Virus record (IMG/VR): IMGVR_UViG_3300028840_008160
Coordinates: 62,001 to 126,000 of that record
Direction: 5' to 3' (one strand)
Length of the DNA stretch: 64,000 nucleotides
Both the position numbers and the translations under genes were made by a program. Position 1 is the stretch's first letter, and every line of letters starts with the position of its first letter. Below, in pieces: positions 11,396 to 64,000 of this stretch. The notes beneath the pieces are model-generated. The model did no database searches. It was not told the DNA's origin and worked only from the letters and a program-made list of their open reading frames with translations.

Positions 11396-14157
11396 TACGC
11401 TTTCAAAGTTATTCACCTGAAAAGAATGCAGTAGGTGTATCAAGAACTTCGCCTATATATTTCGAGATACGTAATGACGGGACAGTAGCTGACAAAACTA
11501 CGCTTAACGTGACGGTTGATGGAAATAATGTTATAGTTAATGGTGTGTTTCAAGCAGGTTATGCTGGAATAATTGACGATCATACTCGAGGATATAATGT
11601 TTACATAACACAAAACTTACCATTTGCACAAGGTTCTGATATTGTAGTTACGATAAATATTAACACTGAGTTTAACGATGTCTATTCGTTTACAATAATC
11701 ACATCTGATGTTACTGCTCCGGTGACAATTGCTAATCCCAGAGGCAGTACATATGCTTCTGCACAGGATGTACAATTATTGACTAATGAACCAGCTACGA
11801 CTTACTATACTATTAATGGATCACTACCTAGTACATCATCACTAGTGTATTCTGCGCCCATACCAATAACAGAAAACACTATATTACGATTTTTTAGTGA
11901 AGATTCTGATTCAAACACTGAATATATTCATACTGAAATGTATGTTATTGATATACAGGCGGTTGATACTAACGCGCCAATTACTACTCCAAATATTGCT
12001 GGTGGAACATATCATGTATTAAGTTCAATAATTTTGACAGCAGATGAACCGTCTACTATCTATTGGACGATAAATGGTCAAACTCCAACTGTTAATTCGT
12101 ATGATGGTAAAGACACATCGCCTGTAACAATTCAATTGCAACAAGGAACAACTGTTTTAAAGTTTTTTGCAGTTGATGATCATGGAAATGAAGAAACTGT
12201 AAAATCTGAAACGTATATAATTGATCCCAGAGAAAACAACATAGTTCCAAAAAATGTGTTTGTGAGCCATCCATATATCAAGAATACGGTTGATATTTGC
12301 TGGGATGACATGACGCCGATTGAATCTGATATTGTAGGGTATAATGTATATCGATCGCAAGTTGATGGTCAACAACTTATGGATTTAGTATCACATGATA
12401 CACTTACTTCTGAAGATGTATACACAAAAGAGCCAGGTACGTTTGTCAAAATTAATAACCAACTCATAACTGTGCCGTTTTATCGTGATCAACAATTAGA
12501 TAGAATCGTAACGCAAGAAGATGTGTCTGAACAATTTAAGTTTAAGACATTGGCTGATGCAGCAACTGATTTTAGTGGTCAAATTGTAAATGCTGACTAT
12601 TGGGAAGCTATTGATCCGGATCGATTGTTTAATCAGTCAGATGGTATTCATTTTACTGATGTTTATGGTGGAAGTAAAGAAGCTTATTTTCAATCAAAAT
12701 TCAGAATGCGTAATGATTTTGAGATTGAAACAGCATATGAACAAATTGTATGGCCGGTGACAGATAATATTCGTCAAGAAGAAATGGCCTTTATTATTGC
12801 TGTAAATCAGTATACGTGCATTGAATTATCACGTATTAGACGCGAAGCCTATGATTATTATGTAAGTAGATTAATAGTGAATTCGCAAGAAATAAGTAAA
12901 GTTGAAACACAGACGATGGATTCAAAAGGACAAATAAAAATTGTTCGTTATGATAGCAATGTTTCAACATATTATTATGATGGGATAAGCTGGGTATTGT
13001 TAGAATCATATTTAAGTTTTTCTCGAGATGATTTGCAAGTAAGATTTTATGCTGTAAGTGCAGATAAACCTATTGATGTATTGTTTTCGTATTTTCACAT
13101 TAATTCAGGTAATGCATATTTGCCGTTATTAAAAAATGTTGATGGTCAGTATTGTATTCAAACACAACATAAACCAATTATAGGAACAGATGATAAAGAA
13201 TATACTGATAGTATTAATGAAGTTGAAGTCATTATTGATGGCCAAGTTGCTTTAATTGATAGAGTTGATGGTTTAAAAGGAACAATCATTCTTAAGACAG
13301 AGCGAGAATTTGATTATGTATTGGACAAATGGATTGAACCTGTTATTCCAACGCCTGAGTCGATTGCGACCGTGACTTATAAGTATAGATTGGCAGAGCT
13401 TAAGTTAAATTTACGAAGATTTCCTCATTATAAAGTTACTGCTGTACTTAGTAATGGTAGCGAAACAAGATTGTCATGGTGTACGTCTGTAACATTACAA
13501 TCTGAGAAATTAGACTATATGTATCGAGAAGCTATTAGAAGAAATGCTTGGTTGTTAGATCAAGCTGGTGAACGTGTCTTGTTGTTTATTAAGAAAACAA
13601 CAGGTGAAAGATGTCAGTGTTATAGATTAAATCAACGAACTCATAAACAACCAAAAGTTGGCAGTTGTTTAGAGTGCTGGGGCACTGGATTTATTGGCGG
13701 TTATGTTGGTCCGTTTGAAATAAAGATTTCACCGTTTCAGGCTGAACAAAAAATTACAATGACAGATCGCGGAATGCATCTTGACAATGTTGAAGATACG
13801 TGGACGACAATAACACCAGTAATAACACAGCGTGATTTTATTGTTCGTAGGAACGGTCAAATATATGCAATAGGTCCTGCTGCTAGACCTGAAGTTAAAG
13901 GTGAACCTACTCAACAACATTTTTCTGTAGAACACGTTGATTCAACAGATATACGATATAAATTTGTACAGTCATTAAATTTGTATGGATATCAGGATAG
14001 AGTTGGATTGAGAAAGGGTACAGATCATTATACTGAAAATCCAATAATTACAGATGGTGAAGTGACTGAACATGACAGACAACGCACTGATAAAGGACCG
14101 ACCGTAACTAATGTTAAAAGAGGTCGAACAATAACATTTGAGAACACGCTTTACTAA
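11392..14157 (+). CDS. Head-closure/neck protein fused to surface-type Ig, chitobiase-C/Fn3-associated and FN3 domains
   Basis: C-terminal GERV...RCQC...CLECWGTGFIGGY zinc motif plus a beta-barrel typical of large myovirus neck proteins. N-terminal SP..NAVGVSR (SbsA-Ig-like), two APVT..P.G.TY...YYTINGS.P units and FN3 (GYNVYRS...YKVTAV). Confidence 0.65.
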   Translation: MIRFQSYSPEKNAVGVSRTSPIYFEIRNDGTVADKTTLNVTVDGNNVIVNGVFQAGYAGIIDDHTRGYNVYITQNLPFAQGSDIVVTININTEFNDVYSFTIITSDVTAPVTIANPRGSTYASAQDVQLLTNEPATTYYTINGSLPSTSSLVYSAPIPITENTILRFFSEDSDSNTEYIHTEMYVIDIQAVDTNAPITTPNIAGGTYHVLSSIILTADEPSTIYWTINGQTPTVNSYDGKDTSPVTIQLQQGTTVLKFFAVDDHGNEETVKSETYIIDPRENNIVPKNVFVSHPYIKNTVDICWDDMTPIESDIVGYNVYRSQVDGQQLMDLVSHDTLTSEDVYTKEPGTFVKINNQLITVPFYRDQQLDRIVTQEDVSEQFKFKTLADAATDFSGQIVNADYWEAIDPDRLFNQSDGIHFTDVYGGSKEAYFQSKFRMRNDFEIETAYEQIVWPVTDNIRQEEMAFIIAVNQYTCIELSRIRREAYDYYVSRLIVNSQEISKVETQTMDSKGQIKIVRYDSNVSTYYYDGISWVLLESYLSFSRDDLQVRFYAVSADKPIDVLFSYFHINSGNAYLPLLKNVDGQYCIQTQHKPIIGTDDKEYTDSINEVEVIIDGQVALIDRVDGLKGTIILKTEREFDYVLDKWIEPVIPTPESIATVTYKYRLAELKLNLRRFPHYKVTAVLSNGSETRLSWCTSVTLQSEKLDYMYREAIRRNAWLLDQAGERVLLFIKKTTGERCQCYRLNQRTHKQPKVGSCLECWGTGFIGGYVGPFEIKISPFQAEQKITMTDRGMHLDNVEDTWTTITPVITQRDFIVRRNGQIYAIGPAARPEVKGEPTQQHFSVEHVDSTDIRYKFVQSLNLYGYQDRVGLRKGTDHYTENPIITDGEVTEHDRQRTDKGPTVTNVKRGRTITFENTLY

Positions 14158-14194
14158 ATGTTGATAAGTTCTGTAATAAAAAAAGGAGAATCCT

Positions 14195-15096: not shown

Positions 15097-15347
15097 GTGT
15101 TAGACGGTTACCATTACGATTTGAGATTGAACAGTCACATAAAGTGAAAATTCATGAAATGCGACGAAAAGCAAAATATGATGTTGCGTTAACATTAGGA
15201 TTACCAATAGAACATAGATTAGTTAATCTAGTTTATGACGCATCGCAAAAACGCGTAAAGATTCTATTAACTAATGATGATGAACTTTTGAAATATAGAC
15301 AAATGCTTAACAACAAATTTCATATAGAGGTTCGTGAATGCAATTAA
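15084..15347 (+). CDS. Hypothetical basic protein
   Basis: 87-aa ORF overlapping both neighbours slightly. Confidence 0.5.
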   Translation: MPKLSVRRLPLRFEIEQSHKVKIHEMRRKAKYDVALTLGLPIEHRLVNLVYDASQKRVKILLTNDDELLKYRQMLNNKFHIEVRECN

Positions 15348-15790
15348 AAATGCGATATCTACATTTCAACTCGTCTGCATTACGAGAAGCTAGAGGTCGC
15401 ATTATTGATGAAACTGCACGTAAAGGTGTTCAAATTTTTAGACAAGAAATAAGAAGAAGAAGGCTTATTAATACAGGTCATATGTTAGATAGTGTTGGTG
15501 CAACAATTAAACGAAATAGTGTAACATTTGACATAAATGCTGATTATGCTGGTATAATAAACGATGGTGTTCGTCGACATAAAATGAGATATTTAGTTGA
15601 TGCAGGACCAATTCCATTAGTTACTAGACGTGGTCGTAAGATTTTTAGAGTTGCAACGCCTTCAAATATAAGAGAACGAGATCGATGGTTACATCCGGGA
15701 TTCAAACGTGGCAAGGGATTCTTTGATAAAAGTGCAGATAAAATTGAAGCTGTTGCAAAAGAGCTTATAATAGATGAAGGTATAATATGA
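15338..15790 (+). CDS. HK97 gp10-like / virion morphogenesis (tail completion) protein
   Basis: Basic protein with NTGHMLDSV (TGxLxxS), YAGIINDG and HPG...FF motifs; neck-region position. Confidence 0.65.
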   Translation: MQLKMRYLHFNSSALREARGRIIDETARKGVQIFRQEIRRRRLINTGHMLDSVGATIKRNSVTFDINADYAGIINDGVRRHKMRYLVDAGPIPLVTRRGRKIFRVATPSNIRERDRWLHPGFKRGKGFFDKSADKIEAVAKELIIDEGII

Positions 15791-15805
15791 ACAATTTAAC
15801 GATTA

Positions 15806-16525
15806 ATGAAGGTATATATGAATGTGCAACTTAATAATGGTCAACTTGGTGATAGAATATGGCATCAGCATACTAGGGCTTTAATGCCAGAGTATGTACG
15901 AGTTATTGGTCGTGTTATCGGCAAAGTTTTTATTCGTGATATCGCTAAAGAAGTTAGATACAATCAAGTTGTTGATATTTTGATAACTGATGCTAAACGA
16001 TCTGATGACTTGGTTAGAGCAATTTCTCAAAAATGGGTTGACATAGTTTACGGAAAAGAATTTTTAGACAAAAAGAAATATTCATCAGAGATTCTACGTC
16101 AACCGTCACAGACGCAATTTGTAACCAATAACGCTAGACAGACTGTTGATTTAAGTGAAGTTAAAGTTTTAGCATCTCAAATTGCACAAGATGCTGCAAA
16201 TAGATCAGTAATGTCAATTAGAGAGTCATTGGATGAATTACAAGAATCAATTAAGAATTCAAAAAGTTCATCAATTGATGTTGACCAAGTTATAAAAGAG
16301 TTGACGACTAAATTGCCACAACAAGCACAAGTCAATGAAAAATCTAAATTTGATGATGAAATTGCTAATAACGTATTTATTAATCTTGACGAACAGAAAG
16401 AGCTAAAAACAAATATACAACAAGACGGTTTGGGGACTGTTACGAAGCGCAAAGGTAAGAAAGCCAAGATGACAATTAAACGATTAAAACATATTAACAA
16501 AGGAGATGGTAATGGAAATGTCTAG
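15806..16525 (+). CDS. Coiled-coil protein, candidate partner of the downstream actin
   Basis: Small N-terminal alpha/beta domain, central coiled coil, basic C-terminal helix; overlaps the start of the actin gene. Confidence 0.6.
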   Translation: MKVYMNVQLNNGQLGDRIWHQHTRALMPEYVRVIGRVIGKVFIRDIAKEVRYNQVVDILITDAKRSDDLVRAISQKWVDIVYGKEFLDKKKYSSEILRQPSQTQFVTNNARQTVDLSEVKVLASQIAQDAANRSVMSIRESLDELQESIKNSKSSSIDVDQVIKELTTKLPQQAQVNEKSKFDDEIANNVFINLDEQKELKTNIQQDGLGTVTKRKGKKAKMTIKRLKHINKGDGNGNV

Positions 16526-17958: not shown

Positions 17959-19164
17959 ATGTTTTACAGAATAACAAATGTTGTTAAAAAAATTATCATT
18001 CAAGAGTTACAAGAGCTCTTTAAGGATCATCCTGTTTTTAGTGATGAATTAGTTATCACTAATAAGTATTCATTTGAAGAACGTCCAAAATATGCTATAA
18101 TTGTTAAAACAGCATCTGCTAAATCACAAAAACTGTCATTAGATAATTATAAGGGAATTGTTCAATCATATGTTACTTTAGCTAATTTAAAGAACACTCC
18201 TGGTCGCATGATAGAATGGGTTAGAGAAGATGTAGCAAACATAAGTAATGTAGTTAAGCCCGGATTTTATGTTGTTGAAATGGTAGAAGATGATCAATTT
18301 ACAGTGTCTGCTTATCTTACTGTTGCTGATGAAGTGTTAACGATTGAGACGAATGGTTTTGAACATGCTTTTTTACAACATCAAAACATTAATCCTAACA
18401 GTGAATTAGTTTTGACAGAAACTGGTCGAAGATTACAACCTAACGAGCATTATACGATTGATAATAGCACGGGTGAAATTACTTTTTTGCAACCAACAGA
18501 AGATTATGAAACTATTTCTGTTGATTATCAATACATTGGTAATGTTACTGGACCGTTTACTGTTCAACCAGAAACAGTTGATCAATTGGCAATACCAGGT
18601 GTTGTTTTAGCATTTGGTAATTTTTTAAAGAAGGGTGGTTTACAAGTAGTAGTTGTGTATCCTGACAGACAAGAAGTAGCAAAATCATATTTAGGCAAAT
18701 GGAATATGACATTAAGTTTGGGTGCGGTTGCTCAAGACACTGATACACAAGAACAATTGATAGATTTAGCATCTATGTATATATGGTCTGTATTACAAGA
18801 AAAATTAGTTAATGATGGTATATATGTGTCAGAATTTAATATTGGTGGTGAATCTGAAGATGATGAAGTGAAGAGTGCTAATGAATTATCGTATATGGGT
18901 GATTTATCGTTTAATGTTGATGTTGAATGGGAAGCTTTTCAACCAATTCTCGGTGTAATTAAGAACGTGTTTCTTAATCGTGTCGAAGATTTTGGACAAT
19001 ATGATGATGCAGAACATGAAATTAGAAGTAAACGACCGTTTAATATATCGCAAAGAGGAGTTGACTACATGACAGGTTTACAACCTGTTGAAAATTTAGA
19101 TCCTTTCCTGATAAGACCTCTTCCAAAATATACTCTGGTGCAATCAAGCACGCACGTTGGGTAG
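17959..19164 (+). CDS. Putative tail terminator/completion protein with inserted beta domain
   Basis: Alpha/beta pattern (IIQELQELF...ERP.YAIIVK...W.MTLSL.AVAQD...EQLID); last neck-type gene before the fibre and sheath. Confidence 0.55.
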   Translation: MFYRITNVVKKIIIQELQELFKDHPVFSDELVITNKYSFEERPKYAIIVKTASAKSQKLSLDNYKGIVQSYVTLANLKNTPGRMIEWVREDVANISNVVKPGFYVVEMVEDDQFTVSAYLTVADEVLTIETNGFEHAFLQHQNINPNSELVLTETGRRLQPNEHYTIDNSTGEITFLQPTEDYETISVDYQYIGNVTGPFTVQPETVDQLAIPGVVLAFGNFLKKGGLQVVVVYPDRQEVAKSYLGKWNMTLSLGAVAQDTDTQEQLIDLASMYIWSVLQEKLVNDGIYVSEFNIGGESEDDEVKSANELSYMGDLSFNVDVEWEAFQPILGVIKNVFLNRVEDFGQYDDAEHEIRSKRPFNISQRGVDYMTGLQPVENLDPFLIRPLPKYTLVQSSTHVG

Positions 19165-29455: not shown

Positions 29456-29873
29456 TAAAGATCCACTTGCATTGTTAAGATCATTGGAATCATATGGATA
29501 TCAAGAACGAGTTGTACCGATTGGTGATGTTAGTATTACATTAGCGCCACTTGGTGCAGCAGAAACAATTGAAGTGTTTGAATCTACTAATCAATATGAA
29601 GATACTGATGCATCAATTCAAAAATTAAAACTTGAAGCTGTTGCTAGATCAATTATTAAAGTAAATGACATATCATTAGATCCAAAAGGAATGCTTGAAG
29701 AAAAACAAAAAATAGTTGGTTCATTTGGTGATGAATTGATTGATATATTATTTGATGAATATTGCCAATTGGATAAGACAATCAAAGCTTCAGTTGTGCA
29801 AAGAGAATCTGCTGTAGTTGATTTAATTAGAGAACCAAAAGAAAATATTGAGTCTAAAAAGGATGAAATGTAA
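29448..29873 (+). CDS. Tail assembly chaperone-like protein
   Basis: ITLAPLG..E...EAVARSIIKVN...ELIDILFDEY; immediately before the tape measure. Confidence 0.6.
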   Translation: MANKDPLALLRSLESYGYQERVVPIGDVSITLAPLGAAETIEVFESTNQYEDTDASIQKLKLEAVARSIIKVNDISLDPKGMLEEKQKIVGSFGDELIDILFDEYCQLDKTIKASVVQRESAVVDLIREPKENIESKKDEM

Positions 29874-46345: not shown

Positions 46346-46555
46346 ATGCAATCAGATTACCAATGGCAAAAGCGGCAGAAGTTAGGGCTTCAAAAAAACA
46401 TAGTTGAACCATTACTTGAAGCACTAAAGAAAGCAGCTGAAGTTGAACGAGACGAGTTAATTCACAAATTGGAAAATTTGAAACGATTAGGTGTGATTTC
46501 AATGAGTAAAGCAGAGTTAAATAAAAAACTTGAGGAGATGAAATTTAAAACATGA
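46346..46555 (+). CDS. Small coiled-coil protein
   Basis: GGAGG RBS; fills the gap; overlaps the next start. Confidence 0.55.
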   Translation: MQSDYQWQKRQKLGLQKNIVEPLLEALKKAAEVERDELIHKLENLKRLGVISMSKAELNKKLEEMKFKT

Positions 46556-52290: not shown

Positions 52291-52755
52291 ATGTCATTTG
52301 ATTTTTTGGGCATTTTTACAAAACAAGACTTAGAGAGCTTGCGATCATGTTTACAAGGCGAAGTTGATAAGATTGATGCTCAAGTGAATCATATGATCAT
52401 GGAAGCTAATAAGCTTCAAAAAACGCTAAACGCACTTATACAGTATTCTAATACTAAAGGTATTAAATTTAAGACGTTTGAAAAAACTTTTTATAGACAA
52501 ACTAGGTCGCAATATGATGACACAAATTCAGCGATATTAGTTCAAAGAATAAAAGAACCATTTTATGCTAATTTGAAAGATAGAGAAAAATATGAATATA
52601 GAATGAGGAAATTGATCGATAAAATAGAACAAATGCATGAGAGGATTCATATTTTGAGAATTATGAAGTCAGAATTTAGATTGAACATTGAGAGTACAAA
52701 TGCACTGTTTAATTCTTTGAACCCTCAATTGACAGTTGAGTCAGAGGTTATATAA
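52291..52755 (+). CDS. Coiled-coil hypothetical protein
   Basis: GGAGG RBS; 154 aa, helical. Confidence 0.6.
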   Translation: MSFDFLGIFTKQDLESLRSCLQGEVDKIDAQVNHMIMEANKLQKTLNALIQYSNTKGIKFKTFEKTFYRQTRSQYDDTNSAILVQRIKEPFYANLKDREKYEYRMRKLIDKIEQMHERIHILRIMKSEFRLNIESTNALFNSLNPQLTVESEVI

Positions 52756-54257
52756 TGTCATTTGAAACTAAACTGCTCAAATATTGTGATCACCGAATGA
52801 TAGAGGAAGATCATGTTGTCGACGTTGATGGTAGAACAGTCTATTTAGATCTTGCTGTTGCTAGCTTTGATAATATCAATACTAGAATTAATGGTATTTC
52901 AGTAGATAGAAATAATAAAATTGAAATATTGTATGAAGAAGATGTAACATCGCAAATAACAGGATTAAATTCTATATTTGTTGTATCAAAAATACCAATA
53001 TATGACGGTTCAAATCGGCGCAGGCCGGCTTCTAGATTGGTAGACGTTATAGTTCAAATTTCTGTTTTTGACGAAGATGCTTCTGCTCAGTTTACTGGAA
53101 CAGATGTTTTATTAGTGACGCAACATAGACCATTAATGTCAGCGTTTAACATTAATGCAATACAATTGACAGATAAAGATGTTGAAGTAAAAGTAGATGA
53201 TGGTTCAGGTCCTGTTGTAGTTGAGATTGAATCAATTGAACCTGTGTTTGGTAAAATTGTTTTAAAAAATCCTCCAGGACCAACTGACACTGTAACTGTG
53301 TCATATCATTATCGAGCTCATGTTGATGCTTTAAATGCTGATTCAGGTTCTATCACTATTCGTGAGGTGCCAGAAATTGGTCAAGAAATATTTATTTCTT
53401 ATTATTATTTAGAAAAAGATGGTTGGCATGTTGAATACAATAATGAAACGTTAAGCAGTATGATTATTTTTGATAGAATTAAGCAGACAAACATAACGTT
53501 AGTGCAAGATGAAGATGTGTCGGATCAATTTATGGGTATAGAAGATTCGTTTTATACTGAACATAAACCAATGATACCACCACGAGCTAAATTAAAAGCT
53601 GAACCAATTGAAACATTGGTAACGCAAATTGCCGTGTTAGTCAATGGTAATAGAGTGACACCGTTGAATTTTAATGCTGAGAAAGGATATGTGTGGTTAG
53701 GTTTTAAACCGGCTGCAACTGATGTTGTAACTATATCGTATCATTATAGAAGTGATAGACCGTCTGATATTATTTCAGTAGATTATCAAGTAAACATTAC
53801 TAAATGTAGAAAGTGTAAACGCACGGGTCAATTGAATGATTTTAGTTATGAAACCGGTGAATTAGTTACGGTTGTTAGAGAAGAAAAAATGTTGCAAGAT
53901 TTGTTAAAACTTGTGACAGCTATTAGAGGATCTAATACAGCTCATGCATGGTATGGCACATCATTAATTTCATTTATTGGTACAGCTAGATTGCCTGAAT
54001 ATTATCAGATTAAGTTTAGAGGCGAAATAATTGATGCTGGTGAACGAATGAAAGATTTGCAGCAGCAACAAACGCAGTATCAGACCGTAGATGATGAAGA
54101 ATTTTTTAGTTTTCTTGATAATATTTTAGTTGAACAAAGCGATTTGGATCCTAATTTTTATGAGATAGAAGCTGTAGTTGTTTCACAAGCAGCAACAGCT
54201 ATTACTTTAAACACATCATTGAAGTTTAATCAGCCGCTATTGGGCTCTTCATTATAA
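52755..54257 (+). CDS. Baseplate wedge/sheath initiator (gp25/GpW-like) with inserted surface domains
   Basis: C-terminal G.L.TV..EEK..QD..K......GSN..H.WYGT.L..FIG gp25-type domain directly before gpJ. Confidence 0.75.
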   Translation: MSFETKLLKYCDHRMIEEDHVVDVDGRTVYLDLAVASFDNINTRINGISVDRNNKIEILYEEDVTSQITGLNSIFVVSKIPIYDGSNRRRPASRLVDVIVQISVFDEDASAQFTGTDVLLVTQHRPLMSAFNINAIQLTDKDVEVKVDDGSGPVVVEIESIEPVFGKIVLKNPPGPTDTVTVSYHYRAHVDALNADSGSITIREVPEIGQEIFISYYYLEKDGWHVEYNNETLSSMIIFDRIKQTNITLVQDEDVSDQFMGIEDSFYTEHKPMIPPRAKLKAEPIETLVTQIAVLVNGNRVTPLNFNAEKGYVWLGFKPAATDVVTISYHYRSDRPSDIISVDYQVNITKCRKCKRTGQLNDFSYETGELVTVVREEKMLQDLLKLVTAIRGSNTAHAWYGTSLISFIGTARLPEYYQIKFRGEIIDAGERMKDLQQQQTQYQTVDDEEFFSFLDNILVEQSDLDPNFYEIEAVVVSQAATAITLNTSLKFNQPLLGSSL

Positions 54258-54270
54258 TGGAGTACAAAAT

Positions 54271-57200
54271 ATGGCGATACCGTCACAACCAACTGGACTA
54301 ACGACAGAAGCTGCTGGAAATAAAATTACGATTCGTTGGATTAAGAATCCTGAACCCGATATTCAAGGGTATAATGTTTATAATTCAACGACATCAGGTG
54401 GCGGGCTGAGTGGTTATGTAAAGTTGAATAACGAGCTTGTTACTGATTATCGATCAATTGAAGAAATTTTGACAAATAGAGTTGAGACAGTAGAAATTAT
54501 TGGCGGTGAGAAGATTACAACAATTCGTGAAGATATTGAAGAAGTATACATGTTTGCATATGATCATGAAGAATTATTAGATAATCAAATACAATATTAT
54601 GTTATCACAGCTGTCAATAATGCTGATGAAGAAAGTTTATATTCAATAGAAATACATGATACGCCGTTAATTTTGTCGACAAAGTTAATTGAATTTCCGA
54701 TAAGGACCACTAGTGATGTTACTAGAACAATGATCAATAGAATTCTGGATAGACATCCAGACATTGATGTTAAGCCAGGGACAATGACTCGAGATCTTCA
54801 TATAGATCCACATGCAGCAGAGTTTTCTCATCTTTACATATATATCGATTTTTTATCAAGATCTCAGTCTTTTATCACATTACTAGATATTGATGATCCA
54901 AACAATACTGGGACATCAATTGATGTTGAAGATTCAGATTATAAGCAGGCATTAAAGGCAGCACTGCAATTTACAGATGATCAAGATTTACAAGATGTGA
55001 TTGATATTGCATTTGATAAGCTTGCTAATAACTTTAATACTTTTAGAATAGATGCAACATCATCAATTGGTCAGGCTGTGTTTTATACTACAATTGAGCC
55101 TTTAAACACTATTGTTATTCCTAAAGGAACAATAGTATCAACAACACCGACATCGACAAAAAATGCCATAAATTTTGAAACTACTGCAGAAGCAAAAATG
55201 CTAATTGCTTCAATTGATGATTATTTTAATGAATCAACACATCGTTATGAGGTAACTGTTGATATTAAGTCGATCGAAACTGGCGAAGTAACAAATGTTA
55301 ATGTTGGTACGATTGTTAATTCTACATTTTCTCAGTTACGCGTTACAAATATTAAGCCGACTGAAAATGGATTTGATCGTGAAAGCAATACTAATTTGGC
55401 CCATAGAGCAATGTTGGCTTTTACTAGTTTAGACGTAGGAACTAGAGATGGATATTTAAGAACTGCGATTGAAACACAATATGTGCAAGATGTTTTGGTA
55501 GTTGATGCAGGTCATGAATTAATGCAACGAGACTTTGATGATTTAAGAGAAGAACATCTTTATGGAAAAGTCGACATATATTTCAAAGGAGATGTGACAG
55601 TATCATATTCAGAAACTTTTGGATTTTTGTATAATGGTGGCATCAATGAAGATGTTCAAATTGATAGTATTACTGATATGAGGATCACTGTATTAAATCC
55701 AGAAGTATCTATTGATTTTCCAGTATATTTAGTACAGCAAGTGACAAATGTAACTCGCGCAGAGGCTTATGATTTAACTGGCAATTATACATTGTATAAA
55801 AATGCAGTTGAATTACAAAAGACGGCATATACTTTGGATCTGACGACGGGTGAAATTGAATTACAAGATCCTCTGTTTCTTGGTGATAGTTTGACGGCAG
55901 ATTATCAATACAAAGTGCCTATCACAGGTGAAGTCGTATTGGCTTCTGCTGCTGGTGGTGAAATACAAGTAACATTAGATGCACCATTAACATTAGGAAA
56001 ACCAGTTGCTATTTTCTCTGACAAAATTTATTTAATTCGAATTAGTGCTTTTTCAATCGATCCTGGCACAGATACATTAACGATTTTGCCAGAACATGTG
56101 TATAAAACTGGTGATGTTGTACGCATTTCTAGTACAGATTCAATGCCATCACCATTATTAGTAGATACTGACTATTATGTAATTAGATTATCTAATACAC
56201 AAATTAAATTAGCAACAACACTGGCAAAGGCTGAAGCCGGAACTGCTATTGATATATTAACATCTGGTGTTGGGTCTTTGACGATTATACCTGAGCCGCA
56301 TATTGAATTAGCAAGAAATGTTGATTATACAATAGATTTAACAACAGGGCAAGTGAATTTCTCATTTTCGTCATTTCCCACAGGTTTGCGTTCAGGTGAT
56401 TCTATTGTAGCTGATTATGATTATGTCGAGACGATTACTGGCGAAATTGTAATTAATAGTGCTTCTGGTGGTGAAACATCTGCTTTATTAGCAAATGGAA
56501 ATATAGTAGAAGCATTTGTTATTGAACCAAATGGTGTGACAATCAATCTTAATGAAGCAAATGCAATTAATTCAGCAATTGGTATGTTAATAACCGATAC
56601 AATACGAGCTACTTATAAATATAGAAAAGCTAGTAATGTGATATTGACAAATCAACCTATTGAATCAATTGTATCTGTGACTACATCAGATGGCACTGCA
56701 TTGGTTGAAGGTACGCATTATCAATTTAACAAAGTCGATGATTTATTACTAAATGGCAATTCAGTGAGAGCGCAACGAAGTATTAAGATGTTGTATGATA
56801 GTGATACTGGTTTACCAGAAGGTAATATTTTAGAAAATGAAGATTCAATTAGTTTAGTCGCATTAGAATATGAACCGTTAACAAAAAAGGGTATTGACGC
56901 AGATACTATTGTTGTAACTAATTTAACTGGAACTATAACTTATGCACTAAATGCTGATTATGTGTTAGAAGTGCCAACTAGTCCGCTTGAAGTTGTGCAA
57001 ATTGCAAGATCAATTGGTTCAACAATAGCTAACGGCGAGACTGTGTTAGTATCATATTGGTATGGAGAGCCTTTAACTGTTGTATACAATGTAAATTCAC
57101 TGATTGCAATTATTCAATCGAAAGTTAATGAAAAGAGACATTTGACGGCTGATGTGTTAGTAAAAGAAGCTAATAGAATAAATGTTGATTTAGAATTTAC

Positions 57201-57795: not shown

Positions 57796-60700
57796 GTGTC
57801 ATTGCCACCGATTACTCAAAGTAACATATCGACACAGTGGTCGACAAATTTCTTCACTGTCATTCTTACGACTAATGAACCGTGTGATACATATTATACT
57901 GTCGATGGTTCTAATCCAATCAGTTCGCCTACAAGAGTATTATATAATGAACCGTTTACAATTGATGAAGAAGGCATTCACACTGTACAATTTTATTCAA
58001 TAAGTCATGCTACAAGTCTTCAGAATTTAGTGCAAACGCATTATGTTCGAATTGATAATTCTCCACCAGTAACAACAATAACTGCTAGCATTAGTCCTGA
58101 TGGTACTAATGGTTGGTATGTAACATTACCAACAATAACATTGTCAGCTGCAGACAATGTATCTGGCATTGACAAAACTATGTATTCTTGGGATGGCGCG
58201 ACGTTTCAGGAGTATACCGGTGGTAATTTAATCATTCCCGATGAAGGAATTCATTATTTACAAGTATATTCTTTGGATTTAGCTAGCAATAAAGAAGAGG
58301 TTCAAACACGCGTTTTTAAATATGATATTTCGGCGCCAACGACGTCTATTAGAATCCCTTTAGAAGTTTCTTACAATCCAGTAACAATTGAATTTGTGCC
58401 GACTGATGGTGCATCTGGTTATGAAACTACTTATTATACTATTGATGGAACGACGCCGACTTTAGAATCAGATTCAGGACCGACATTTGACATTAGTGAA
58501 TCTGGATTGTACATTGTAAAATATTTTTCTGTTGACAATGCCGGAAATGTCGAGTCTATAAAAGAATCGGGTCAAGTAAGGGTTGAAATTGATCCTGAAA
58601 CGATACAAGTATTATTGACTGAAAGTTTTCCTATAAACGGGAAAAATGGATGGTATAGAGCATCGCCTCAGATTGGCATTTTAACAACTAAGCCTCATCT
58701 TGTTACATCACTAGAATATAAAGTTGCGCCAAAAGAAAAGCCAACGACTGCAACGTATACAAGCACAGTAGAGATTACTGGTGAAATTGATTTGTCTGAC
58801 GGCACGTTTATTGCATTAGAGCTTGATCAGTCTGGTCAACCATTAGTAATTAATATCCGAGGAACTGATAAAACAAAGACAACTATTGATGATATCATTG
58901 GTAAGATTAATGACACTATTGGTGGTGACACACCCATAGCTAAAGAGACTGGACCTGACGGTTTAGAAGGCACAGGTTATGTGACTGTGACTTCACCGAC
59001 AGCTGGAACTGGGTCGCAGACATCTGAAATCAAATTTGTTAGTCCGGGCACTTATGATGCTACTGGCGTGGTGTTTGGATTAGATGTTGATAATTATCCG
59101 CATACATTTACTGAAACTTATTTGTTTGAAGACTATTCAGCACCGTTTTTGTTGCCTGGTAATGGTTATTGGAATGTAGTAGCTAGAGCAACAACTGCTA
59201 CTGAAACTGCTGAAGTAACAAAAGATTATAGGGTCGATTCGACAGCTCCCGTGACAACTGTGAATGTTGTTCCTGACCCAAATCCTGAAGGATTTTATAC
59301 TACATCACCAGACATTACTTTTTCAACTGAAGATGAAGATTCAGGTATTGATAGAATCGTTTATCAATTTGATAATGGACCGGTATTCGAATATCACCCT
59401 GAAGACGGGCCGCTGCAATTACCACCAGAATCAAAAGAAATTCTTCTTAGATATTTCTCTGTTGATATTGCTGGCAATTCTGAGGCCCCTAAGATCACGA
59501 CATTTAATTATGATTTTATTGCACCAACAACTAAGTTTGATATTAACGCTGTCAATTTGGATTCTCAAAATATACTGGACATAATGTTCTGTCCAGCTCA
59601 AATCGTTAAATATAATCCGTATACAGATGAATATCAGTTTACGTTAACACCGCAACAACGTGAAAGTTTGTCATATTTTGCAGGGTGGACAAATGATCTA
59701 GATTCTAGATTATATGATGAGACTACGCCTGTAGCATTTAATGTTGATGTAAGTACTGATATTTTAACATTTATTCCGGCGTATACATTATTGACAGAAG
59801 ATGTTGTTCGTGTTGCAAGTACGGGTGTATTGCCGACACCATTACAGCCTGCAACAGACTACTATATTATTAGTGTAACTGATACTGAGTGTAAACTTGC
59901 AGCAACATTGTCAGATGCGCAAAACAGTATAGCTATCGATATCACTGATGAAGGTACAGGCATACATACATTAATACCAGATAAACCGACAATTGTAGTT
60001 TTTGATCCATTGAAAGTTTATTTATGGCCAATTGATGATCGAGAATATGTAATTGAAGATGAAACAGTTGCAACAAAAGATGAAGATATTCGTGAATTAA
60101 CTATTGAAAATGGATTTTTGAAACATGTCATTAGTATTTATAATCAAGCGACATTATCATTCATGTCGTATAGATACTTTTCAGATGACAAAATCTATAC
60201 TGTCGAGTCGTTTTCTAACACTGACACTATTATAGTGAGTTATGCATATACAAAAATTAAAGAAACGCATTATACAATTAATGGTTCAACACCAACTACT
60301 TTGTCGCCTGAAGGTCACATAATTCATTTGTTTGAGAGTGGTGAATATGATCTTAAGTGGTTTTCAATTGATGAAGCCGGAAACCAAGAATCAATTGTAA
60401 CATTTCCTGCAACAATAGTTATTATTAATCGCGCGCCAACAGTTGATGTATCAATTGTTAAGCATAATGATGTTGGCACACTATATAGTCCTAATGGCAC
60501 AAATAATTGGTATAAGCGTGACGAGATTGAACCGCTTTTACGACCCGTAATCAAAATAGAATATTCTAGTCCTAATGTATCAATATTTAATGAAAATTCT
60601 GATGTTGAAAATGTCACTGGCGCAGGGCCATATAATGTTGAATTGCGTGTTTTGAAAGTTGATGCAACTGTTGAAGAAGTGTCTGATGTAACTAGAGTTA

Positions 60701-63700
60701 GAAACATAACAAAAGCAGAAACATATAGTATTGTATCTTATGGTGGTGTTGGTACTGAAGACAGAATATTTACAACAGCAATTGTGTCACCAGATCCGGG
60801 CGATGTTTTTGAGGTCGATTACAAATTTAATACTGTGTTAGATGGTAACCCTGATGGCAAAATATTAAAAATTGGTGATCCAAATAATCCTGATGTTGAA
60901 ATTGATTTTTCAGCAGAAACAAGCCTGTATTATTATCAATTGCCAAGTGGCTACAATATACAAGGGGCAAAAGAAATAACTATTGTTGTTAAAGATCTTA
61001 GAGAAGCAGTTACTACTGTTAATGAAATACCTCAATTACCTGACAATTTGTTAAAACTTGATGTAGACGATCCAATAACAGTAGATAATGTTGTGCCAGG
61101 ATGGGTAGCGACTGATGTTACAGTGACTTTGACGGCAACAGATCCTATACCTCCATTGCCGTATGAATTTCCTTCAGGCATGTATAGGATTTATTACAGT
61201 ACTGATGGGTCATTTCCAAATGTGCTGTATGGCGCTGGGTCAGTCGTTCATATTACGTTGACTACGACAGGTCAATATGTAATAAAATATAGGGGTATTG
61301 ATAATGCAGGAAATGACGAAAGCGTTAAGACATCAACTGTTGTACAGATTGATAAGATTGCACCAACAACGACGATATCTGTTGTTCCGCCTGACGGGTA
61401 TAATGGTTGGTATAAAACGCCGCCGTCAATTGTTTTGAATGCAGTTGATTTAGATTCTGGTGTTGATAAAACTTATTACAAATGGGACGATGATCCGACA
61501 TTTACTGAGTACATAGCATCTATTTTAATTCCATCTGAAGGCGTACATACATTATATTACTATAGCGTTGACAATGTTGGTAATGTTGAAGTACTGAAAC
61601 AGCAAGAGTTTAAACTAGATACTATTGCCCCAGTAACAACTGATGATATTACAGGTTCATGGACCAATGATTCTGTTATTCATTTAACAGTACTTGATGA
61701 TTCATCAGGGCCATATAGGACATATTATACATATGCATTAGTTGGTGATCCTCATCCTGATCCTACACTGTTTTCACCATATACAGAAACATTTGAAATT
61801 GCTATTCCGGCTAGTGGGATTTACAATGTTAAGTATTTTTCTATCGATAATGCAGGAAATCAAGAAGCAGTTCAAACGGCGTTAAATCAATTTTATTTGG
61901 ATTTGACAAAACCTGTCATTGTATCTATTGATCCGCCAGATTTAGTATTTACAACGCAGACATATTTGACAGTCAATTTTACTGACACATTTTCAGGTCT
62001 TGATATTGATACTGTTCGTATTGTTGTTGATGATATTGAATATTCAACAAGCAAAAACTCATCATTCTTTTCTTATTCAGGCACGCCGTTTGCTACACAA
62101 GTTCAAGTAGGGCCTGTTGCTAGTATACCAAATTTTGATAAATTAGAGAGTGCAGTCATTTATGCTAATGATTTTGCTGGTAATGCTTTAGATCCTGAAG
62201 TCATTCAAGTCATACCAGTTGATAATGAACCGCCTTACATTAGACGTTTTTGGCCAAGAGATAAAGCTAATGATGTGTCAAGAGATACAAATATCGTATT
62301 TGAGATCAACGATGACATTTCTACTGTTGATATTAGAACAGTTAAAGTTAAAGTCGCTGAAACAGAGTATCAATTAGTTACTAAAGATGTAATTGATATT
62401 GAATATTCTGGGTTGGGCAATCAAATTTTTATTGATGTTCGCAATCATAGTTTGTTTATAACAGTTGATGGCATCGTAATTATTAATATTAATTTAACTC
62501 ATGAAGATTATATCACATGTAAGAAAGTTGCGACATTTATTGATGGTTTGCCAGGTTTTAGTACAACGATAGATCGTGAAAATGACCAAATATTAAGTAC
62601 TGACCTTATTGGTTTGTATCATGTAAGAATTGATCCGACGATTACATTGTCTGTTGCTACTTTTGAAGACAATGTGAACATAAACTATATGCCGAGAGAT
62701 CGAGGTTATTTAATCGCAATTACACCGACAGAAACATTTGATGATAATTACACTGTAATTACTAGAATTGAAGCATCTGATTTTACTGGTAATGAAATGC
62801 CAGTTGAACAATATTCGTTTGTTTGTAAAGACATAACTACTCCATCTAGAGATATAAGATATAGATGGTATGATTATCATGTTGACATCATTAACAGAAT
62901 TAAAAGCAATTTAGAAAGCACGTATAATAAATATACTGATTCAACAGTGTTTCACGGTTATTTTAGGTCGTTAGCACTCGAAATTGCTAGAGCAATGCAA
63001 ATAGCTGAAGATTATCGTGATGATGTTTATTATGATGGCGGAACAACAAGATCAGAATTGTTGTATCAAAATATTGGATATTTACTTAAAACGCCACCAC
63101 AAGAAGAGTATACACATAATGAATATAGACAGATTTTAATGGCAGTTATGTATATGTTATTTCATGGATCAACTAAACAAAGTCTACTTACTGGTTTAGG
63201 TGTGTTTTTAGGTATTCATGATTTGTCAATTACTGAAAATAGCTTGACAGAAAGCAGTGATATTTCACAACAATTTAGTTTTACGTTTGACGTGTCAATA
63301 GGTGATAATCATATAAGAAATTGGGAAGATTTTAATGAAAACATTGATGCCGTATTGCGTATTGTTAAACCGGCTCATACTTATTTCTTGATAAGATATT
63401 TATTTTCTGAAATTGTTAGAACAAAAGATATTGTTGATGAGATTATTAAATGGCATTTTGAATATTATGGTACTGAAGACGTAAGAACTGACTGTGCTGA
63501 AAAGTACAAAGTAGCTGAAACAATCACAGAAGACGTTTCAAATCAATTTAGTGGTTCAAACAATTGTTGTACGGCTTTTTATACGCCGATTTTAAGTTGG
63601 GACGAAACAACAATAACTACTACACCATCTGATATACAAGTTACTGCGTCTGGTGGACCAATAAATGTGATTTCTGTCGACGGCTTTACTGGCGAAATTT

Positions 63701-64000
63701 GTTTCGATCGTAATCCGGGACCTGCAGAAATAGTTGAAATTATCTATAAGTTTAATAAATACGTTATTTACAGGAAGATCGGTTTTTATCTGAACACATA
63801 TACACTTACAGGTGGAGGGTTTGATCCAGCTCAACCATATCTGCTAAATCAAACTGGTAATCCTGTAATTGTTATGATTGCGTATGATAATCCAGAAGAA
63901 ATGCATGCTCATATTTGCGAAGCTGGATTATTTATTGATGTTCATTATCCTATTAGTGAGAAACTATGGACGTCACCTGTTGAGAGAATAATATTTGACG
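57796..64000 (+). CDS. Giant baseplate wedge gpI/gp7-like protein with N-terminal Ig/chitobiase-C arrays (>2060 aa, 3'-truncated; absent from ORF track)
   Basis: GTG at 57796 (MSLPPITQSNISTQW...). No stop was seen in the stretches of frame 1 that I read, and its absence from the track fits a frame that stays open to the edge. Many APVT...D..SG...YY..DG...Y.SVD.AGN.E units; near 62900-63400 LYQNIGYLL...YRQIL...HGST...IVKPAHT (gpI-type). Confidence 0.85.
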   Translation, partial: MSLPPITQSNISTQWSTNFFTVILTTNEPCDTYYTVDGSNPISSPTRVLYNEPFTIDEEGIHTVQFYSISHATSLQNLVQTHYVRIDNSPPVTTITASISPDGTNGWYVTLPTITLSAADNVSGIDKTMYSWDGATFQEYTGGNLIIPDEGIHYLQVYSLDLASNKEEVQTRVFKYDISAPTTSIRIPLEVSYNPVTIEFVPTDGASGYETTYYTIDGTTPTLESDSGPTFDISESGLYIVKYFSVDNAGNVESIKESGQVRVEIDPETIQVLLTESFPINGKNGWYRASPQIGILTTKPHLVTSLEYKVAPKEKPTTATYTSTVEITGEIDLSDGTFIALELDQSGQPLVINIRGTDKTKTTIDDIIGKINDTIGGDTPIAKETGPDGLEGTGYVTVTSPTAGTGSQTSEIKFVSPGTYDATGVVFGLDVDNYPHTFTETYLFEDYSAPFLLPGNGYWNVVARATTATETAEVTKDYRVDSTAPVTTVNVVPDPNPEGFYTTSPDITFSTEDEDSGIDRIVYQFDNGPVFEYHPEDGPLQLPPESKEILLRYFSVDIAGNSEAPKITTFNYDFIAPTTKFDINAVNLDSQNILDIMFCPAQIVKYNPYTDEYQFTLTPQQRESLSYFAGWTNDLDSRLYDETTPVAFNVDVSTDILTFIPAYTLLTEDVVRVASTGVLPTPLQPATDYYIISVTDTECKLAATLSDAQNSIAIDITDEGTGIHTLIPDKPTIVVFDPLKVYLWPIDDREYVIEDETVATKDEDIRELTIENGFLKHVISIYNQATLSFMSYRYFSDDKIYTVESFSNTDTIIVSYAYTKIKETHYTINGSTPTTLSPEGHIIHLFESGEYDLKWFSIDEAGNQESIVTFPATIVIINRAPTVDVSIVKHNDVGTLYSPNGTNNWYKRDEIEPLLRPVIKIEYSSPNVSIFNENSDVENVTGAGPYNVELRVLKVDATVEEVSDVTRVRNITKAETYSIVSYGGVGTEDRIFTTAIVSPDPGDVFEVDYKFNTVLDGNPDGKILKIGDPNNPDVEIDFSAETSLYYYQLPSGYNIQGAKEITIVVKDLREAVTTVNEIPQLPDNLLKLDVDDPITVDNVVPGWVATDVTVTLTATDPIPPLPYEFPSGMYRIYYSTDGSFPNVLYGAGSVVHITLTTTGQYVIKYRGIDNAGNDESVKTSTVVQIDKIAPTTTISVVPPDGYNGWYKTPPSIVLNAVDLDSGVDKTYYKWDDDPTFTEYIASILIPSEGVHTLYYYSVDNVGNVEVLKQQEFKLDTIAPVTTDDITGSWTNDSVIHLTVLDDSSGPYRTYYTYALVGDPHPDPTLFSPYTETFEIAIPASGIYNVKYFSIDNAGNQEAVQTALNQFYLDLTKPVIVSIDPPDLVFTTQTYLTVNFTDTFSGLDIDTVRIVVDDIEYSTSKNSSFFSYSGTPFATQVQVGPVASIPNFDKLESAVIYANDFAGNALDPEVIQVIPVDNEPPYIRRFWPRDKANDVSRDTNIVFEINDDISTVDIRTVKVKVAETEYQLVTKDVIDIEYSGLGNQIFIDVRNHSLFITVDGIVIININLTHEDYITCKKVATFIDGLPGFSTTIDRENDQILSTDLIGLYHVRIDPTITLSVATFEDNVNINYMPRDRGYLIAITPTETFDDNYTVITRIEASDFTGNEMPVEQYSFVCKDITTPSRDIRYRWYDYHVDIINRIKSNLESTYNKYTDSTVFHGYFRSLALEIARAMQIAEDYRDDVYYDGGTTRSELLYQNIGYLLKTPPQEEYTHNEYRQILMAVMYMLFHGSTKQSLLTGLGVFLGIHDLSITENSLTESSDISQQFSFTFDVSIGDNHIRNWEDFNENIDAVLRIVKPAHTYFLIRYLFSEIVRTKDIVDEIIKWHFEYYGTEDVRTDCAEKYKVAETITEDVSNQFSGSNNCCTAFYTPILSWDETTITTTPSDIQVTASGGPINVISVDGFTGEICFDRNPGPAEIVEIIYKFNKYVIYRKIGFYLNTYTLTGGGFDPAQPYLLNQTGNPVIVMIAYDNPEEMHAHICEAGLFIDVHYPISEKLWTSPVERIIFD

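What the first reader, a model, noticed from the sequence alone, without database searches (positions are those of the whole stretch)
12517..63756. One 'EDVSxQFxG' domain grafted onto neck, sheath and two baseplate proteins
Seen: a ~75-aa unit, EDVS.Q(F/A).G......T...PI.DG......V.V.V.G....V..VDG..G.I.L...P.....VTVSY. It occurs in the neck protein (from 12517), three times in the sheath (from 23908, 24163, 24628), three times in the gp25-like protein (52935-53750) and in the gpI-like protein (from 63529). Inference: the entire tail surface is coated with one domain family (many copies via the sheath), perhaps an outer lattice, an adhesin or a shield.
Basis: partly seen in the sequence, partly recalled or inferred. 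Interest (0 to 1): 0.6.

Follow-up and report, generated by a model that had tools for sequence, protein, structure and literature searches.

The report
Shared beta-barrel module on huge-phage tail proteins
A roughly 84-residue beta-barrel domain really is repeated in the tail sheath, the sheath-initiator, a baseplate wedge protein and a connector-region protein of a huge uncultured phage; it is an ancient, well-conserved module of that phage clade and a distant relative of a known tail-tip domain, but what it does is still inferred.

Summary
The motif E-[DN]-[VLI]-[ST]-x-Q occurs eight times in the six-frame translation, only at the reported places and only in four + strand ORFs. Profiles detect every copy (E 1e-21 to 1e-34 for the full ones). 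Two details were missed. The copy in the 921-aa 'neck' protein is split after its first strand by a ~200-aa ConA-like lectin fold. The first copy in the gp25-like protein is split by the second copy nested inside it.

The window lies in a 330-kb phage record from sediment and seawater metagenomes. Ten of 11 related records show the same four-protein distribution, and the copies cluster by position, not by genome, so the grafts are ancient. A profile search of 1.84 billion proteins gave 485 hits. Of the 150 listed, most are sheaths of 900-2480 aa.

The AF2 model (pLDDT 94.8) is a small beta-barrel. Its nearest solved relative is the outward-facing insertion barrel of the R4C/GTA-type distal tail protein (DUF2460; Z 7.2, 25% identity). 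It is not a described sheath domain.

Sheath copies 1 and 2 are as conserved as the contractile core. I therefore favour a structural, insertion-tolerant pedestal layer over a host-specific adhesin. The function is inferred, and the 'neck' and 'gpI' labels are unverified.

The parts
23716..26478 (+). Tail sheath gene (P0002, 920 aa): N-arm 1-62, three domain copies, variable region 386-545, conserved core 546-920
   Evidence: Phage_sheath_1C 33.3 bits, above the 26.9 cut-off. phrog_2839 tail sheath E 1.5e-29. tblastn hits to annotated sheaths of Tunturi_5, phage G and cluster C mycobacteriophages.
23902..24147 (+). Sheath copy 1 (aa 63-144)
   Evidence: Profile E 6.9e-33 and 3.8e-31. Sub-threshold DUF2460 match at profile positions 95-175.
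24154..24405 (+). Sheath copy 2 (aa 147-230), directly abutting copy 1
   Evidence: E 4.8e-34. AF2 model of this copy has pLDDT 94.8.
24619..24867 (+). Sheath copy 3 (aa 302-385)
   Evidence: E 8.8e-34.
52755..54257 (+). gp25-like (sheath-initiator-like) gene (P0003, 500 aa): N-terminal extension with three copies, then a CxxC motif and a C-terminal core of about 160 aa
   Evidence: Lies immediately upstream of the Baseplate_J gene. The C-terminal profile weakly hits the phi812 baseplate wedge subunit ORF61 (E 0.02) and the diffocin sheath initiator (E 0.08). No Pfam GPW_gp25 hit.
52932..53060 (+). gp25-like copy 1, N-terminal half (profile positions 2-44)
   Evidence: E 2.9e-8 with a profile that does not contain it.
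53064..53327 (+). gp25-like copy 2, nested inside copy 1
   Evidence: E 3.6e-32.
53316..53420 (+). gp25-like copy 1, C-terminal half (profile positions 49-83)
   Evidence: E 2.9e-5. The same split recurs in relatives and in alignment A3.
53502..53756 (+). gp25-like copy 3
   Evidence: E 1.6e-32.
57796..64000 (+). Large wedge-position protein (P0004; 2159 aa in the full record, cut by the window end), with CHB_HEX_C/Fn3_assoc repeats
   Evidence: Gene directly after Baseplate_J. Pfam CHB_HEX_C_1 E 1e-21. Full length from the genome. No sequence relative in the PDB for its conserved C-region.
63523..63765 (+). Copy in the wedge-position protein (aa 1910-1991)
   Evidence: E 4.4e-34.
11392..14157 (+). 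921-aa 'neck-like' protein (P0001): 2x CHB_HEX_C, an FN3-like stretch (by eye only, not run against any family model), the split domain with a lectin-fold insert, and a C-terminal Cys4 domain
   Evidence: Pfam. Lies upstream of small connector-like genes, one of which hits tail completion/Neck1 phrog_5. 44 homologs, all unnamed.
12517..12549 (+). First strand of the neck-like copy (EDVSEQF..., aa 376-386)
   Evidence: E[DN]VSxQ is present at this position in 41 of the 43 homologs; the two without it are intein-bearing and align only partly. The local strand-helix pattern resembles the domain model.
12550..13128 (+). ConA-like lectin/glucanase jelly roll inserted into the neck-like copy (about aa 387-579)
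   Evidence: AF2 block pLDDT is about 83-95 over this stretch. Foldseek finds GH43 C-domains, GH16 and ERGIC-53/legume lectins at E 1e-7 to 1e-6. Weak DUF1583_C hit.
13129..13398 (+). Body of the neck-like copy (aa ~580-669, with a 15-aa loop insertion)
   Evidence: E 2.6e-25 with A1, which contains it. E 1.5e-8 with A2, which does not.
55774..55923 (+). Weak half-copy (C-terminal hairpin part) in the Baseplate_J protein (P0005, 54271-57780)
   Evidence: DUF2460 profile positions 128-177, E 2.4e-5. A2 profile E 0.03. Baseplate_J 64.9 bits. Relatives' Baseplate_J proteins carry 3-5 clear copies (P0063, P0095, P0152).
18379..18534 (+). Very weak half-copy-like hairpin in ORF 17959-19164 (P0199)
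   Evidence: DUF2460 positions 122-173, E 0.009. Not significant on its own.

Best explanation
The repeated unit is a real, autonomous beta-barrel domain of about 84 aa. Its consensus is E-[DN]-[VLI]-[ST]-x-Q-x-x-G ... F ... P-[IV]-[VL] ... V-x-V-x-V-[ND]-G ... [VL]-[DN]-G-x-x-G-x-[IV]-x-L ... P ... V-x-V-[TS]-Y-[YFW]-[YF]. It is a distant homologue of the outward-protruding insertion barrel of GTA/R4C-type distal tail proteins (Pfam DUF2460). In an old clade of huge myophages (roughly 300-490 kb; sediment, seawater, soil) it was duplicated and inserted into the proteins that build the outside of the contractile tail. These are the sheath (3 copies per subunit, so hundreds per virion by inference), the gp25-like sheath initiator (3 copies), Baseplate_J in relatives, the large wedge protein after it, and a 921-aa protein of the connector region. 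Most likely (inferred, not shown) it is a structural module. It would form a conserved, rigid middle layer or 'pedestal' outside the contractile core, tolerate domain insertions, and carry the variable distal domains: sheath region 386-545 and its huge expansions in 1200-2480-aa sheaths, the ConA-like lectin fold in the neck-like protein, and a second copy in gp25-like. On this view it is not itself the host-specific binder.
For: The domain is real and shared. Confident fold: pLDDT 94.8, pTM 0.82. Homology to the DUF2460 barrel has four lines of support. Sub-threshold Pfam hits always fall on profile positions ~95-180. Two family members reach the Pfam cut-off (P0055 33.2 bits, P0146 30.7 bits). 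The best structural match is 8gtc_G residues 93-179 (Z 7.2, rmsd 2.4 over 72 aa, 25% identity). An Atlas cluster that is 61% DUF2460 matches at TM 0.73. The R4C paper describes a Dit insertion domain as a barrel protruding outward from the tube (PMC10276861); I take it to be the matched chain, but did not check this. The grafts are clade-wide and ancient: the same four-protein pattern occurs in 10 of 11 related records, and copies cluster by position rather than by genome. Structural constraint: sheath copies 1 and 2 are as conserved among 16 orthologs as the core (32-71% against 28-69%), while region 386-545 is the most variable (26-44%). The detached first strand is kept in 41 of 43 neck-like homologs. 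Insertion tolerance: two independent nested insertions. In giant sheaths the copies stay near the N-terminus while the protein grows behind them. Outward position: additional sheath domains lie away from the tube in solved and modelled sheaths (PMC9230969). Related folds serve as docking modules (T7 fibre N-terminal domain).
Against: There is no assembly-level evidence: no coordinates of a ring, no cryo-EM, and the homodimer prediction gave no answer (which is not evidence either way). Z 7.2 is in the range the tool calls common for small beta folds; the homology call leans on the agreement of sequence and structure hits. The R4C authors themselves speculate that the Dit insertion domain binds carbohydrate. 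Some family members sit in an ABC sugar-transporter permease and beside a BNR propeller, and the carrier proteins here are rich in carbohydrate-binding-like modules. All of this fits an adhesin role as well. Equal conservation with the core could also reflect a conserved glycan ligand.
Confidence: 0.5

Rival explanations
1. Low-affinity glycan adhesin: the copies themselves bind surface polysaccharide, so the whole tail (sheath, baseplate, neck) acts as a multivalent sticky surface for reversible adsorption, like Ig-like domains on other phages.
For: The R4C authors propose carbohydrate capture for the homologous Dit insertion domain (PMC10276861). Family members are fused to an ABC permease in a sugar-uptake operon with SBP_bac_8 and to a BNR/YCF48-like propeller. 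The domain co-occurs with CHB_HEX_C, Fn3_assoc and a ConA-like fold in the same proteins. Evseev et al. suggest adhesion as one role of additional sheath domains.
Against: No carbohydrate-binding Pfam family matches the domain. Copies 1 and 2 evolve as slowly as the contractile core, while a neighbouring region is the variable one. The most conserved residues form the N-terminal strand motif and Gly/Pro/Tyr positions typical of fold determinants. No binding site was identified.
Confidence: 0.25
2. Continuous homotypic outer lattice: copies on neighbouring sheath subunits contact each other. The copies on the gp25-like and wedge proteins seed this second layer, and the neck-like protein terminates it, so the layer runs from baseplate to neck.
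For: In this genome the domain is restricted to proteins expected to abut the sheath ends or to form the sheath. The initiator carries three copies like the sheath. The pattern is conserved in 10 of 11 relatives. Conservation is high.
Against: The isolated relative Tunturi 5 has the domain only in its sheath, so baseplate and neck copies are not needed for a sheath that carries it. The tail contracts normally there (PMC11924767). The 'neck' location of P0001 is unverified. There is no interface evidence.
Confidence: 0.15
3. Protective shield: the dense layer of copies masks the sheath and baseplate from proteases or host or environmental factors.
For: High copy number and an inferred outer position only.
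Against: Nothing specific supports it. It does not explain the conserved polar motif or the positional orthology.
Confidence: 0.05

Closest known systems
Insertion (barrel) domain of GTA/R4C-type distal tail proteins, Pfam DUF2460 (PF09343); structure 8GTC chain G residues 93-179
   Same: Same small beta-barrel (Z 7.2, rmsd 2.4 A over 72 aa, 25% identity; Atlas TM 0.73). Detectable sequence similarity confined to DUF2460 profile positions ~95-180. Both are outward-facing additions to a tail ring protein.
   Different: DUF2460 is one copy inserted in a siphophage/GTA Dit core. Here the barrel lacks the Dit core and carries its own E-D-V-S-x-Q first-strand motif. It is multiplied and nested, and it sits in contractile-tail proteins. 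Most copies score below the Pfam cut-off.
Additional (non-core) domains of phage tail sheath proteins, e.g. T4 gp18 domains I/II and phi812 domain II; survey by Evseev et al. 2022 (PMC9230969)
   Same: Inserted between the N- and C-terminal parts of the conserved core, and more numerous in large genomes. They are proposed to stabilise the tail or aid adhesion.
   Different: Those domains are mostly described as Ig-like sandwiches and are specific to the sheath. This one is a DUF2460-type barrel shared with baseplate and connector-region proteins. No solved sheath gave a close match (best sheath-related row Z 3.9).
Promiscuous Ig-like decoration domains of phage structural proteins (Hoc, tail tube, fibres)
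   Same: A small beta domain spread over several virion proteins of one phage. It is probably accessory to the core machinery.
   Different: Different fold family, with no Ig/Big Pfam hit on the copies. The phage uses classical ASH/HYDIN Ig-like repeats elsewhere (ORF 46552-52227). The copies are positionally orthologous and slowly evolving rather than frequently exchanged.
N-terminal docking domain of the T7 tail fibre gp17 (Phage_T7_tail)
   Same: Weak fold resemblance (VIA Z 3.9; Atlas TM 0.61; many BFVD fibre N-termini). The R4C authors noted the same resemblance for the Dit insertion domain.
   Different: No sequence similarity was detected. That domain anchors a fibre to the tail; no such role is shown here.

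Membership tests
DUF2460 (PF09343, GTA/R4C-type distal tail protein) | Whole-protein score at or above the curated cut-off of 30.4 bits | tested here: not met
   P0002 27.1 bits and P0005 23.6 bits; own-genome scan 0 of 1 over the cut-off. Two relatives elsewhere just reach it (P0055 33.2, P0146 30.7).
DUF2460 (PF09343, GTA/R4C-type distal tail protein) | Presence of the Dit core (profile positions ~1-95 and 180-205) around the barrel | tested here: not met
   All matches cover only profile positions ~93-180. The carrier proteins are a sheath, Baseplate_J and others.
DUF2460 insertion-barrel fold (superfamily level) | Same fold as the solved Dit insertion domain | tested here: met
   8gtc_G 93-179: Z 7.2, rmsd 2.4 over 72 aa, 25% identity, top of 48,161 chains. 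Atlas DUF2460 cluster TM 0.73, rmsd 1.9. Z is modest for a small beta fold. That chain G is the Dit was inferred from its length and residue range against the paper's description, not checked.
Contractile tail sheath (Phage_sheath_1C PF17482 / phrog_2839) | C-terminal sheath domain above the curated cut-off | tested here: met
   P0002: 33.3 bits against 26.9; phrog_2839 E 1.5e-29; tblastn to annotated sheaths.
gp25/GPW sheath initiator (PF04965) | Sequence match to the GPW_gp25 family or to solved sheath initiators | tested here: inconclusive
   No Pfam hit at E<=0.1. A profile of the C-terminal 165 aa hits the phi812 wedge subunit ORF61 (E 0.02) and the diffocin sheath initiator CD1370 (E 0.08) over the conserved G-S...Y-G motif region.
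gp25/GPW sheath initiator (PF04965) | Gene directly upstream of the Baseplate_J gene (W-J-I order) | tested here: met
   P0003 ends at 54257; the Baseplate_J protein P0005 starts at 54271.
P2 gpI / T4 gp7-like wedge protein | Sequence or profile similarity to known members | tested here: not met
   No Pfam or PHROG family of that kind. A profile of the conserved region found no PDB relative. Only the gene position after Baseplate_J supports the label.
Neck / head-tail connector protein | Similarity to a known neck, adaptor, stopper or terminator family | tested here: not met
   P0001: no Pfam, PHROG or NCBIfam connector family. The C-terminal profile found nothing in the PDB. Atlas neighbours are unnamed viral proteins. 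The fold of the C-terminal domain could not be searched alone because the model list was filled by the lectin insert.
Ig-like / Big decoration domains | Match to an Ig-like or Big Pfam family, or an Ig sandwich as best fold match | tested here: not met
   No such Pfam hit on the copies. The top fold matches are barrels of tail and neck proteins and single jelly rolls.

The most novel reading that the evidence does not exclude
The copies form a second, self-templating outer layer of the contractile tail. The three copies on the gp25-like initiator (plus those on the wedge proteins) would nucleate a homotypic lattice that propagates through the three copies on every sheath subunit and is capped by the copy on the connector-region protein. 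This would be an 'outer sheath' with its own initiation and termination, and it would have to rearrange on contraction.
Probability: 0.12. Interest if true: 0.7.

Novelty: new variant of a known kind. Interest (0 to 1): 0.45.

Why it matters
Extra sheath domains are known but poorly understood, and they are usually treated as sheath-specific Ig-like add-ons. Here one barrel family links the sheath, its initiator, the wedge proteins and a connector-region protein across a whole clade of huge phages. The family is distantly related to the Dit insertion domain of GTA-like siphophages. It shows clean examples of domain-in-domain insertion and sits in sheaths that grow to about 2500 aa. It gives a named, searchable module for annotating tail genes in very divergent huge-phage genomes. 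It also offers a concrete structural question: is it a pedestal, a lattice or an adhesin? That question can be tested in an isolated phage (Tunturi 5). Finally, it is a candidate insertion-tolerant scaffold for display on phage tails.

Tried and rejected
- blastn of the sheath gene against GenBank phages found no match.
- Profile searches of PDB sequences with A1 and A2 gave only non-significant hits to SH1 ORF 25 and HCIV-1 VP4 single jelly rolls (E 0.13-0.15).
- Foldseek against the PDB and BFVD with the domain model gave nothing at E<=1e-3.
- Profiles of the P0004 conserved region and of the P0001 C-terminal domain found no meaningful PDB relatives.
- Foldseek with the 557-aa P0001 model was swamped by the ConA-like insert, so the C-terminal fold stays unidentified.
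- The Atlas feature search of the P0001 C-terminus gave only unnamed viral clusters.
- Complex prediction on two copies of sheath residues 60-390 gave 'no answer'. It counts neither for nor against binding.
- Bacillus phage G, whose sheath core is related, has no copy of the domain.
- Rejected as chance or low complexity: E-values down to 1e-34 and conservation in hundreds of proteins.
- Rejected as recent intragenomic shuffling: the copies are positionally orthologous.
- Rejected as an Ig-like domain: no Pfam or fold support.

Full report
**Context.** The window is bases 62001-126000 of a 329.8-kb IMG/VR virus record (CheckV 67% complete, uniform 33-37% GC, 56 tRNA genes outside the window). 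Every ORF of 155 aa or more is on the + strand. Identifiable genes show a myophage tail module:
- tail completion/Neck1 (15338-15790);
- sheath (23716-26478; Phage_sheath_1C above cut-off, phrog_2839 E 1.5e-29);
- tape measure (29873-33313);
- Baseplate_J (54271-57780, 64.9 bits).

The DNA is held by a sediment and a seawater metagenome run, either of which may be the source sample. No GenBank phage matches at the DNA level.

**Observation.** All are inside P0001 (11392-14157), P0002 (sheath), P0003 (52755-54257) and P0004 (57796 to beyond the window end; 2159 aa in the record). A profile of seven copies (A1) finds only these places in the whole record. A 94-row profile, 88 rows of which come from other phages (A2), re-finds the six full copies at E 6e-21 to 4e-31. 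It also picks up pieces that were not in the alignment:
- the neck-like body (E 1.5e-8);
- the N-half of gp25-like copy 1 (profile positions 2-44, E 2.9e-8);
- the C-half of the same copy (profile positions 49-83, E 2.9e-5).

So copy 2 of the gp25-like protein is nested inside copy 1. The same split is seen in the family alignment and in relatives.

In P0001 the motif at nt 12517 (aa 376) is only the first strand. Profile positions 16-67 match at aa 587-637, about 200 aa downstream. The detached E[DN]VSxQ is kept in 41 of the 43 homologs collected, down to 38% identity over the searched region (residues 560-921); the two without it are intein-bearing and align only in part. An AF2 model of aa 365-921 (mean pLDDT 77; block values about 81-95 over model residues 11-300) puts a jelly roll between the two parts. 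Foldseek assigns that insert to ConA-like lectins/glucanases (E about 1e-7). I could not read the coordinates, so the packing of the first strand onto the barrel is inferred from the profile matches and the secondary-structure pattern. It was not seen directly.

**What the domain is.** The consensus from 94 copies is E4 (90%), D/N5, S/T7, Q9 (95%), G12, F17, P23, G59 (96%), P67 and Y77 (100%), with alternating V/I strands. AF2 on the domain alignment gives pLDDT 94.8 and pTM 0.82, a small all-beta barrel.

No Pfam, PHROG or NCBIfam model covers it at threshold. The one recurrent weak hit is DUF2460, always at profile positions ~95-180: sheath copy 1 (27.1 bits), Baseplate_J aa 503-551 (23.6 bits) and ORF 17959-19164. 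Two relatives elsewhere reach the cut-off.

Structure agrees with this. The top row of an all-against-all search of 48,161 chains is 8gtc_G residues 93-179 (Z 7.2, rmsd 2.4 A, 72 aa, 25% identity). This chain belongs to the baseplate-tail complex of the RcGTA-like siphophage R4C. [quoted passage not shown] I take chain G to be that Dit from its length and residue range, but did not check it directly. The ESM Atlas search returns a cluster that is 61% DUF2460 (TM 0.73) and a T7-fibre N-terminal cluster (TM 0.61).

Foldseek alone found nothing significant, and Z about 7 is not exceptional for small beta folds. The homology claim therefore rests on sequence and structure agreeing. The claim is at superfamily level only: the Dit core is absent, so the copies are not DUF2460 members.

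**Distribution.** The A1 profile against 1.84 billion representatives gave 485 proteins at E<=1e-3 and 200 at E<=1e-10. The best 150 break down as follows:
- Most are sheath homologs of 900-2480 aa, with 2-5 copies near the N-terminus.
- Ten are gp25-like homologs.
- Five are homologs of P0004.
- Three are Baseplate_J proteins with 3-5 clear copies.
- A few are other architectures.

One odd member (P0146) is an ABC permease with four copies. It lies in a cellular sugar-transporter operon on a 143-kb contig, so the fold is not confined to phages.

Among isolated phages, Tunturiibacter phage Tunturi 5 (309 kb, contractile tail seen extended and contracted) has three copies, in the sheath only. 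The 485-kb uncultured phage LR745208 has copies in the sheath, a 1764-aa ORF and a 469-aa ORF. Phage G has none.

Ten of 11 IMG/VR records fetched through the gp25-like gene repeat the window's pattern: sheath x3, gp25-like with split copy, a 1.5-3.4-kaa protein, and a ~920-aa protein. In a maximum-likelihood tree the copies group by position (sheath 1, 2, 3; gp25-like inner and last; P0004-type) and not by genome. Shuffled labels never did as well. The grafts therefore predate the clade and have been kept in place.

**How it probably works.** Shown: the copies lie between the sheath's N-terminal arm (aa 1-62) and its conserved core (546-920). They also form N-terminal or internal additions to the gp25-like, Baseplate_J (in relatives) and following wedge-position proteins. 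From established sheath structures, such inserted domains point away from the tube (PMC9230969).

Among 16 sheath orthologs, copies 1 and 2 are as conserved as the core (32-71% against 28-69% identity). Copy 3 is somewhat less conserved, and region 386-545 is the most variable (26-44%). In the giant sheaths the copies stay at ~80-160 and ~270-350 while the protein grows behind them. The domain twice hosts another domain inside itself.

I therefore favour a conserved, insertion-tolerant structural layer (a pedestal) that carries variable distal modules (confidence about 0.5). A glycan-adhesin role is the main rival (0.25). It is supported by the R4C authors' suggestion, by the transporter and BNR fusions, and by the carbohydrate-type modules in the same proteins. 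A two-copy complex prediction of sheath residues 60-390 returned no answer and is not used.

**Labels of the carrier proteins.**
- 'Sheath' is secure.
- 'gp25-like' is reasonable. The gene lies directly upstream of Baseplate_J, and a profile of its C-terminal 165 aa weakly hits the phi812 wedge subunit and the diffocin sheath initiator over the conserved core motif (E 0.02 and 0.08). It fails Pfam.
- 'gpI-like' and 'neck' rest on gene order only.

**Novelty.** Extra sheath domains and promiscuous decoration domains are known. New here are four things. The family itself has no model of its own in Pfam, PHROGs or NCBIfam and was not met in the papers searched. It links to the Dit insertion barrel. 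It is shared in a positionally conserved way between the sheath, its initiator, wedge proteins and a connector-region protein. It shows nested insertions. I rate it a new variant of a known kind, of moderate interest.

Noticed in passing
window 16506-17660 (+): A 384-aa ORF between the tail-completion gene and the sheath gives weak actin-like hits (MamK E 3.4e-6, MreB E 5e-6, far below cut-offs). It may be a phage-encoded actin-fold protein inside the tail module.
   Followed up: no
G000 144.9-175 kb (outside the window): 56 tRNA genes in one block, including anticodon CTA (amber suppressor, 151440-151511) and TTA (ochre suppressor, 158885-158959). The window's genes read open under code 11, so any stop-codon reassignment would be partial or stage-specific.
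   Followed up: no
window 38890-40194 (+): A 434-aa ORF with HNH/endonuclease, Holliday-resolvase-like and DNA-binding PHROG hits sits in the middle of the tail genes. It is probably a homing endonuclease.
   Followed up: no
proteins P0196-P0198 (homologs of P0001 from other metagenomes): Some homologs of the 921-aa neck-like protein carry intein domains (Hint_2, Intein_splicing, LAGLIDADG_3).
   Followed up: no
window 46552-52227 (+): A 1891-aa protein with many ASH / HYDIN / Cep192-type Ig-like (PapD-like) repeats (ASH E 3e-53). This is a different decoration-domain family used in the same tail module.
   Followed up: no
window 19436-23338 (+): A 1300-aa protein just upstream of the sheath with many repeats of the type G-N-V-G-I-G-T-x-x-P, which look fibre-like by eye, and no Pfam hit. 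It may be a neck or side fibre.
   Followed up: partly
window 13620-13720 (P0001 aa ~745-775) and window 53805-53816 (P0003 aa 351-354): Conserved Cys motifs follow the domain in two carrier proteins. In P0001, CxC...CxxC is kept in at least 90% of homologs. In P0003, CxxC is invariant in 11 homologs. These are possible zinc ribbons at the junction to the C-terminal anchoring domains.
   Followed up: partly
window 10561-11395 (+): A holin-like ORF (phrog_1299, E 2.9e-8) and a phosphoheptose-isomerase-like ORF (phrog_1238, E 1.7e-27) lie directly upstream of P0001, among the structural genes.
   Followed up: no
protein P0146 (ENA contig of 143 kb): A cellular ABC-transporter permease (BPD_transp_1) with four N-terminal copies of the same barrel, in an operon with an ATPase, SBP_bac_8 and a second permease. 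The domain is therefore not phage-only.
   Followed up: partly
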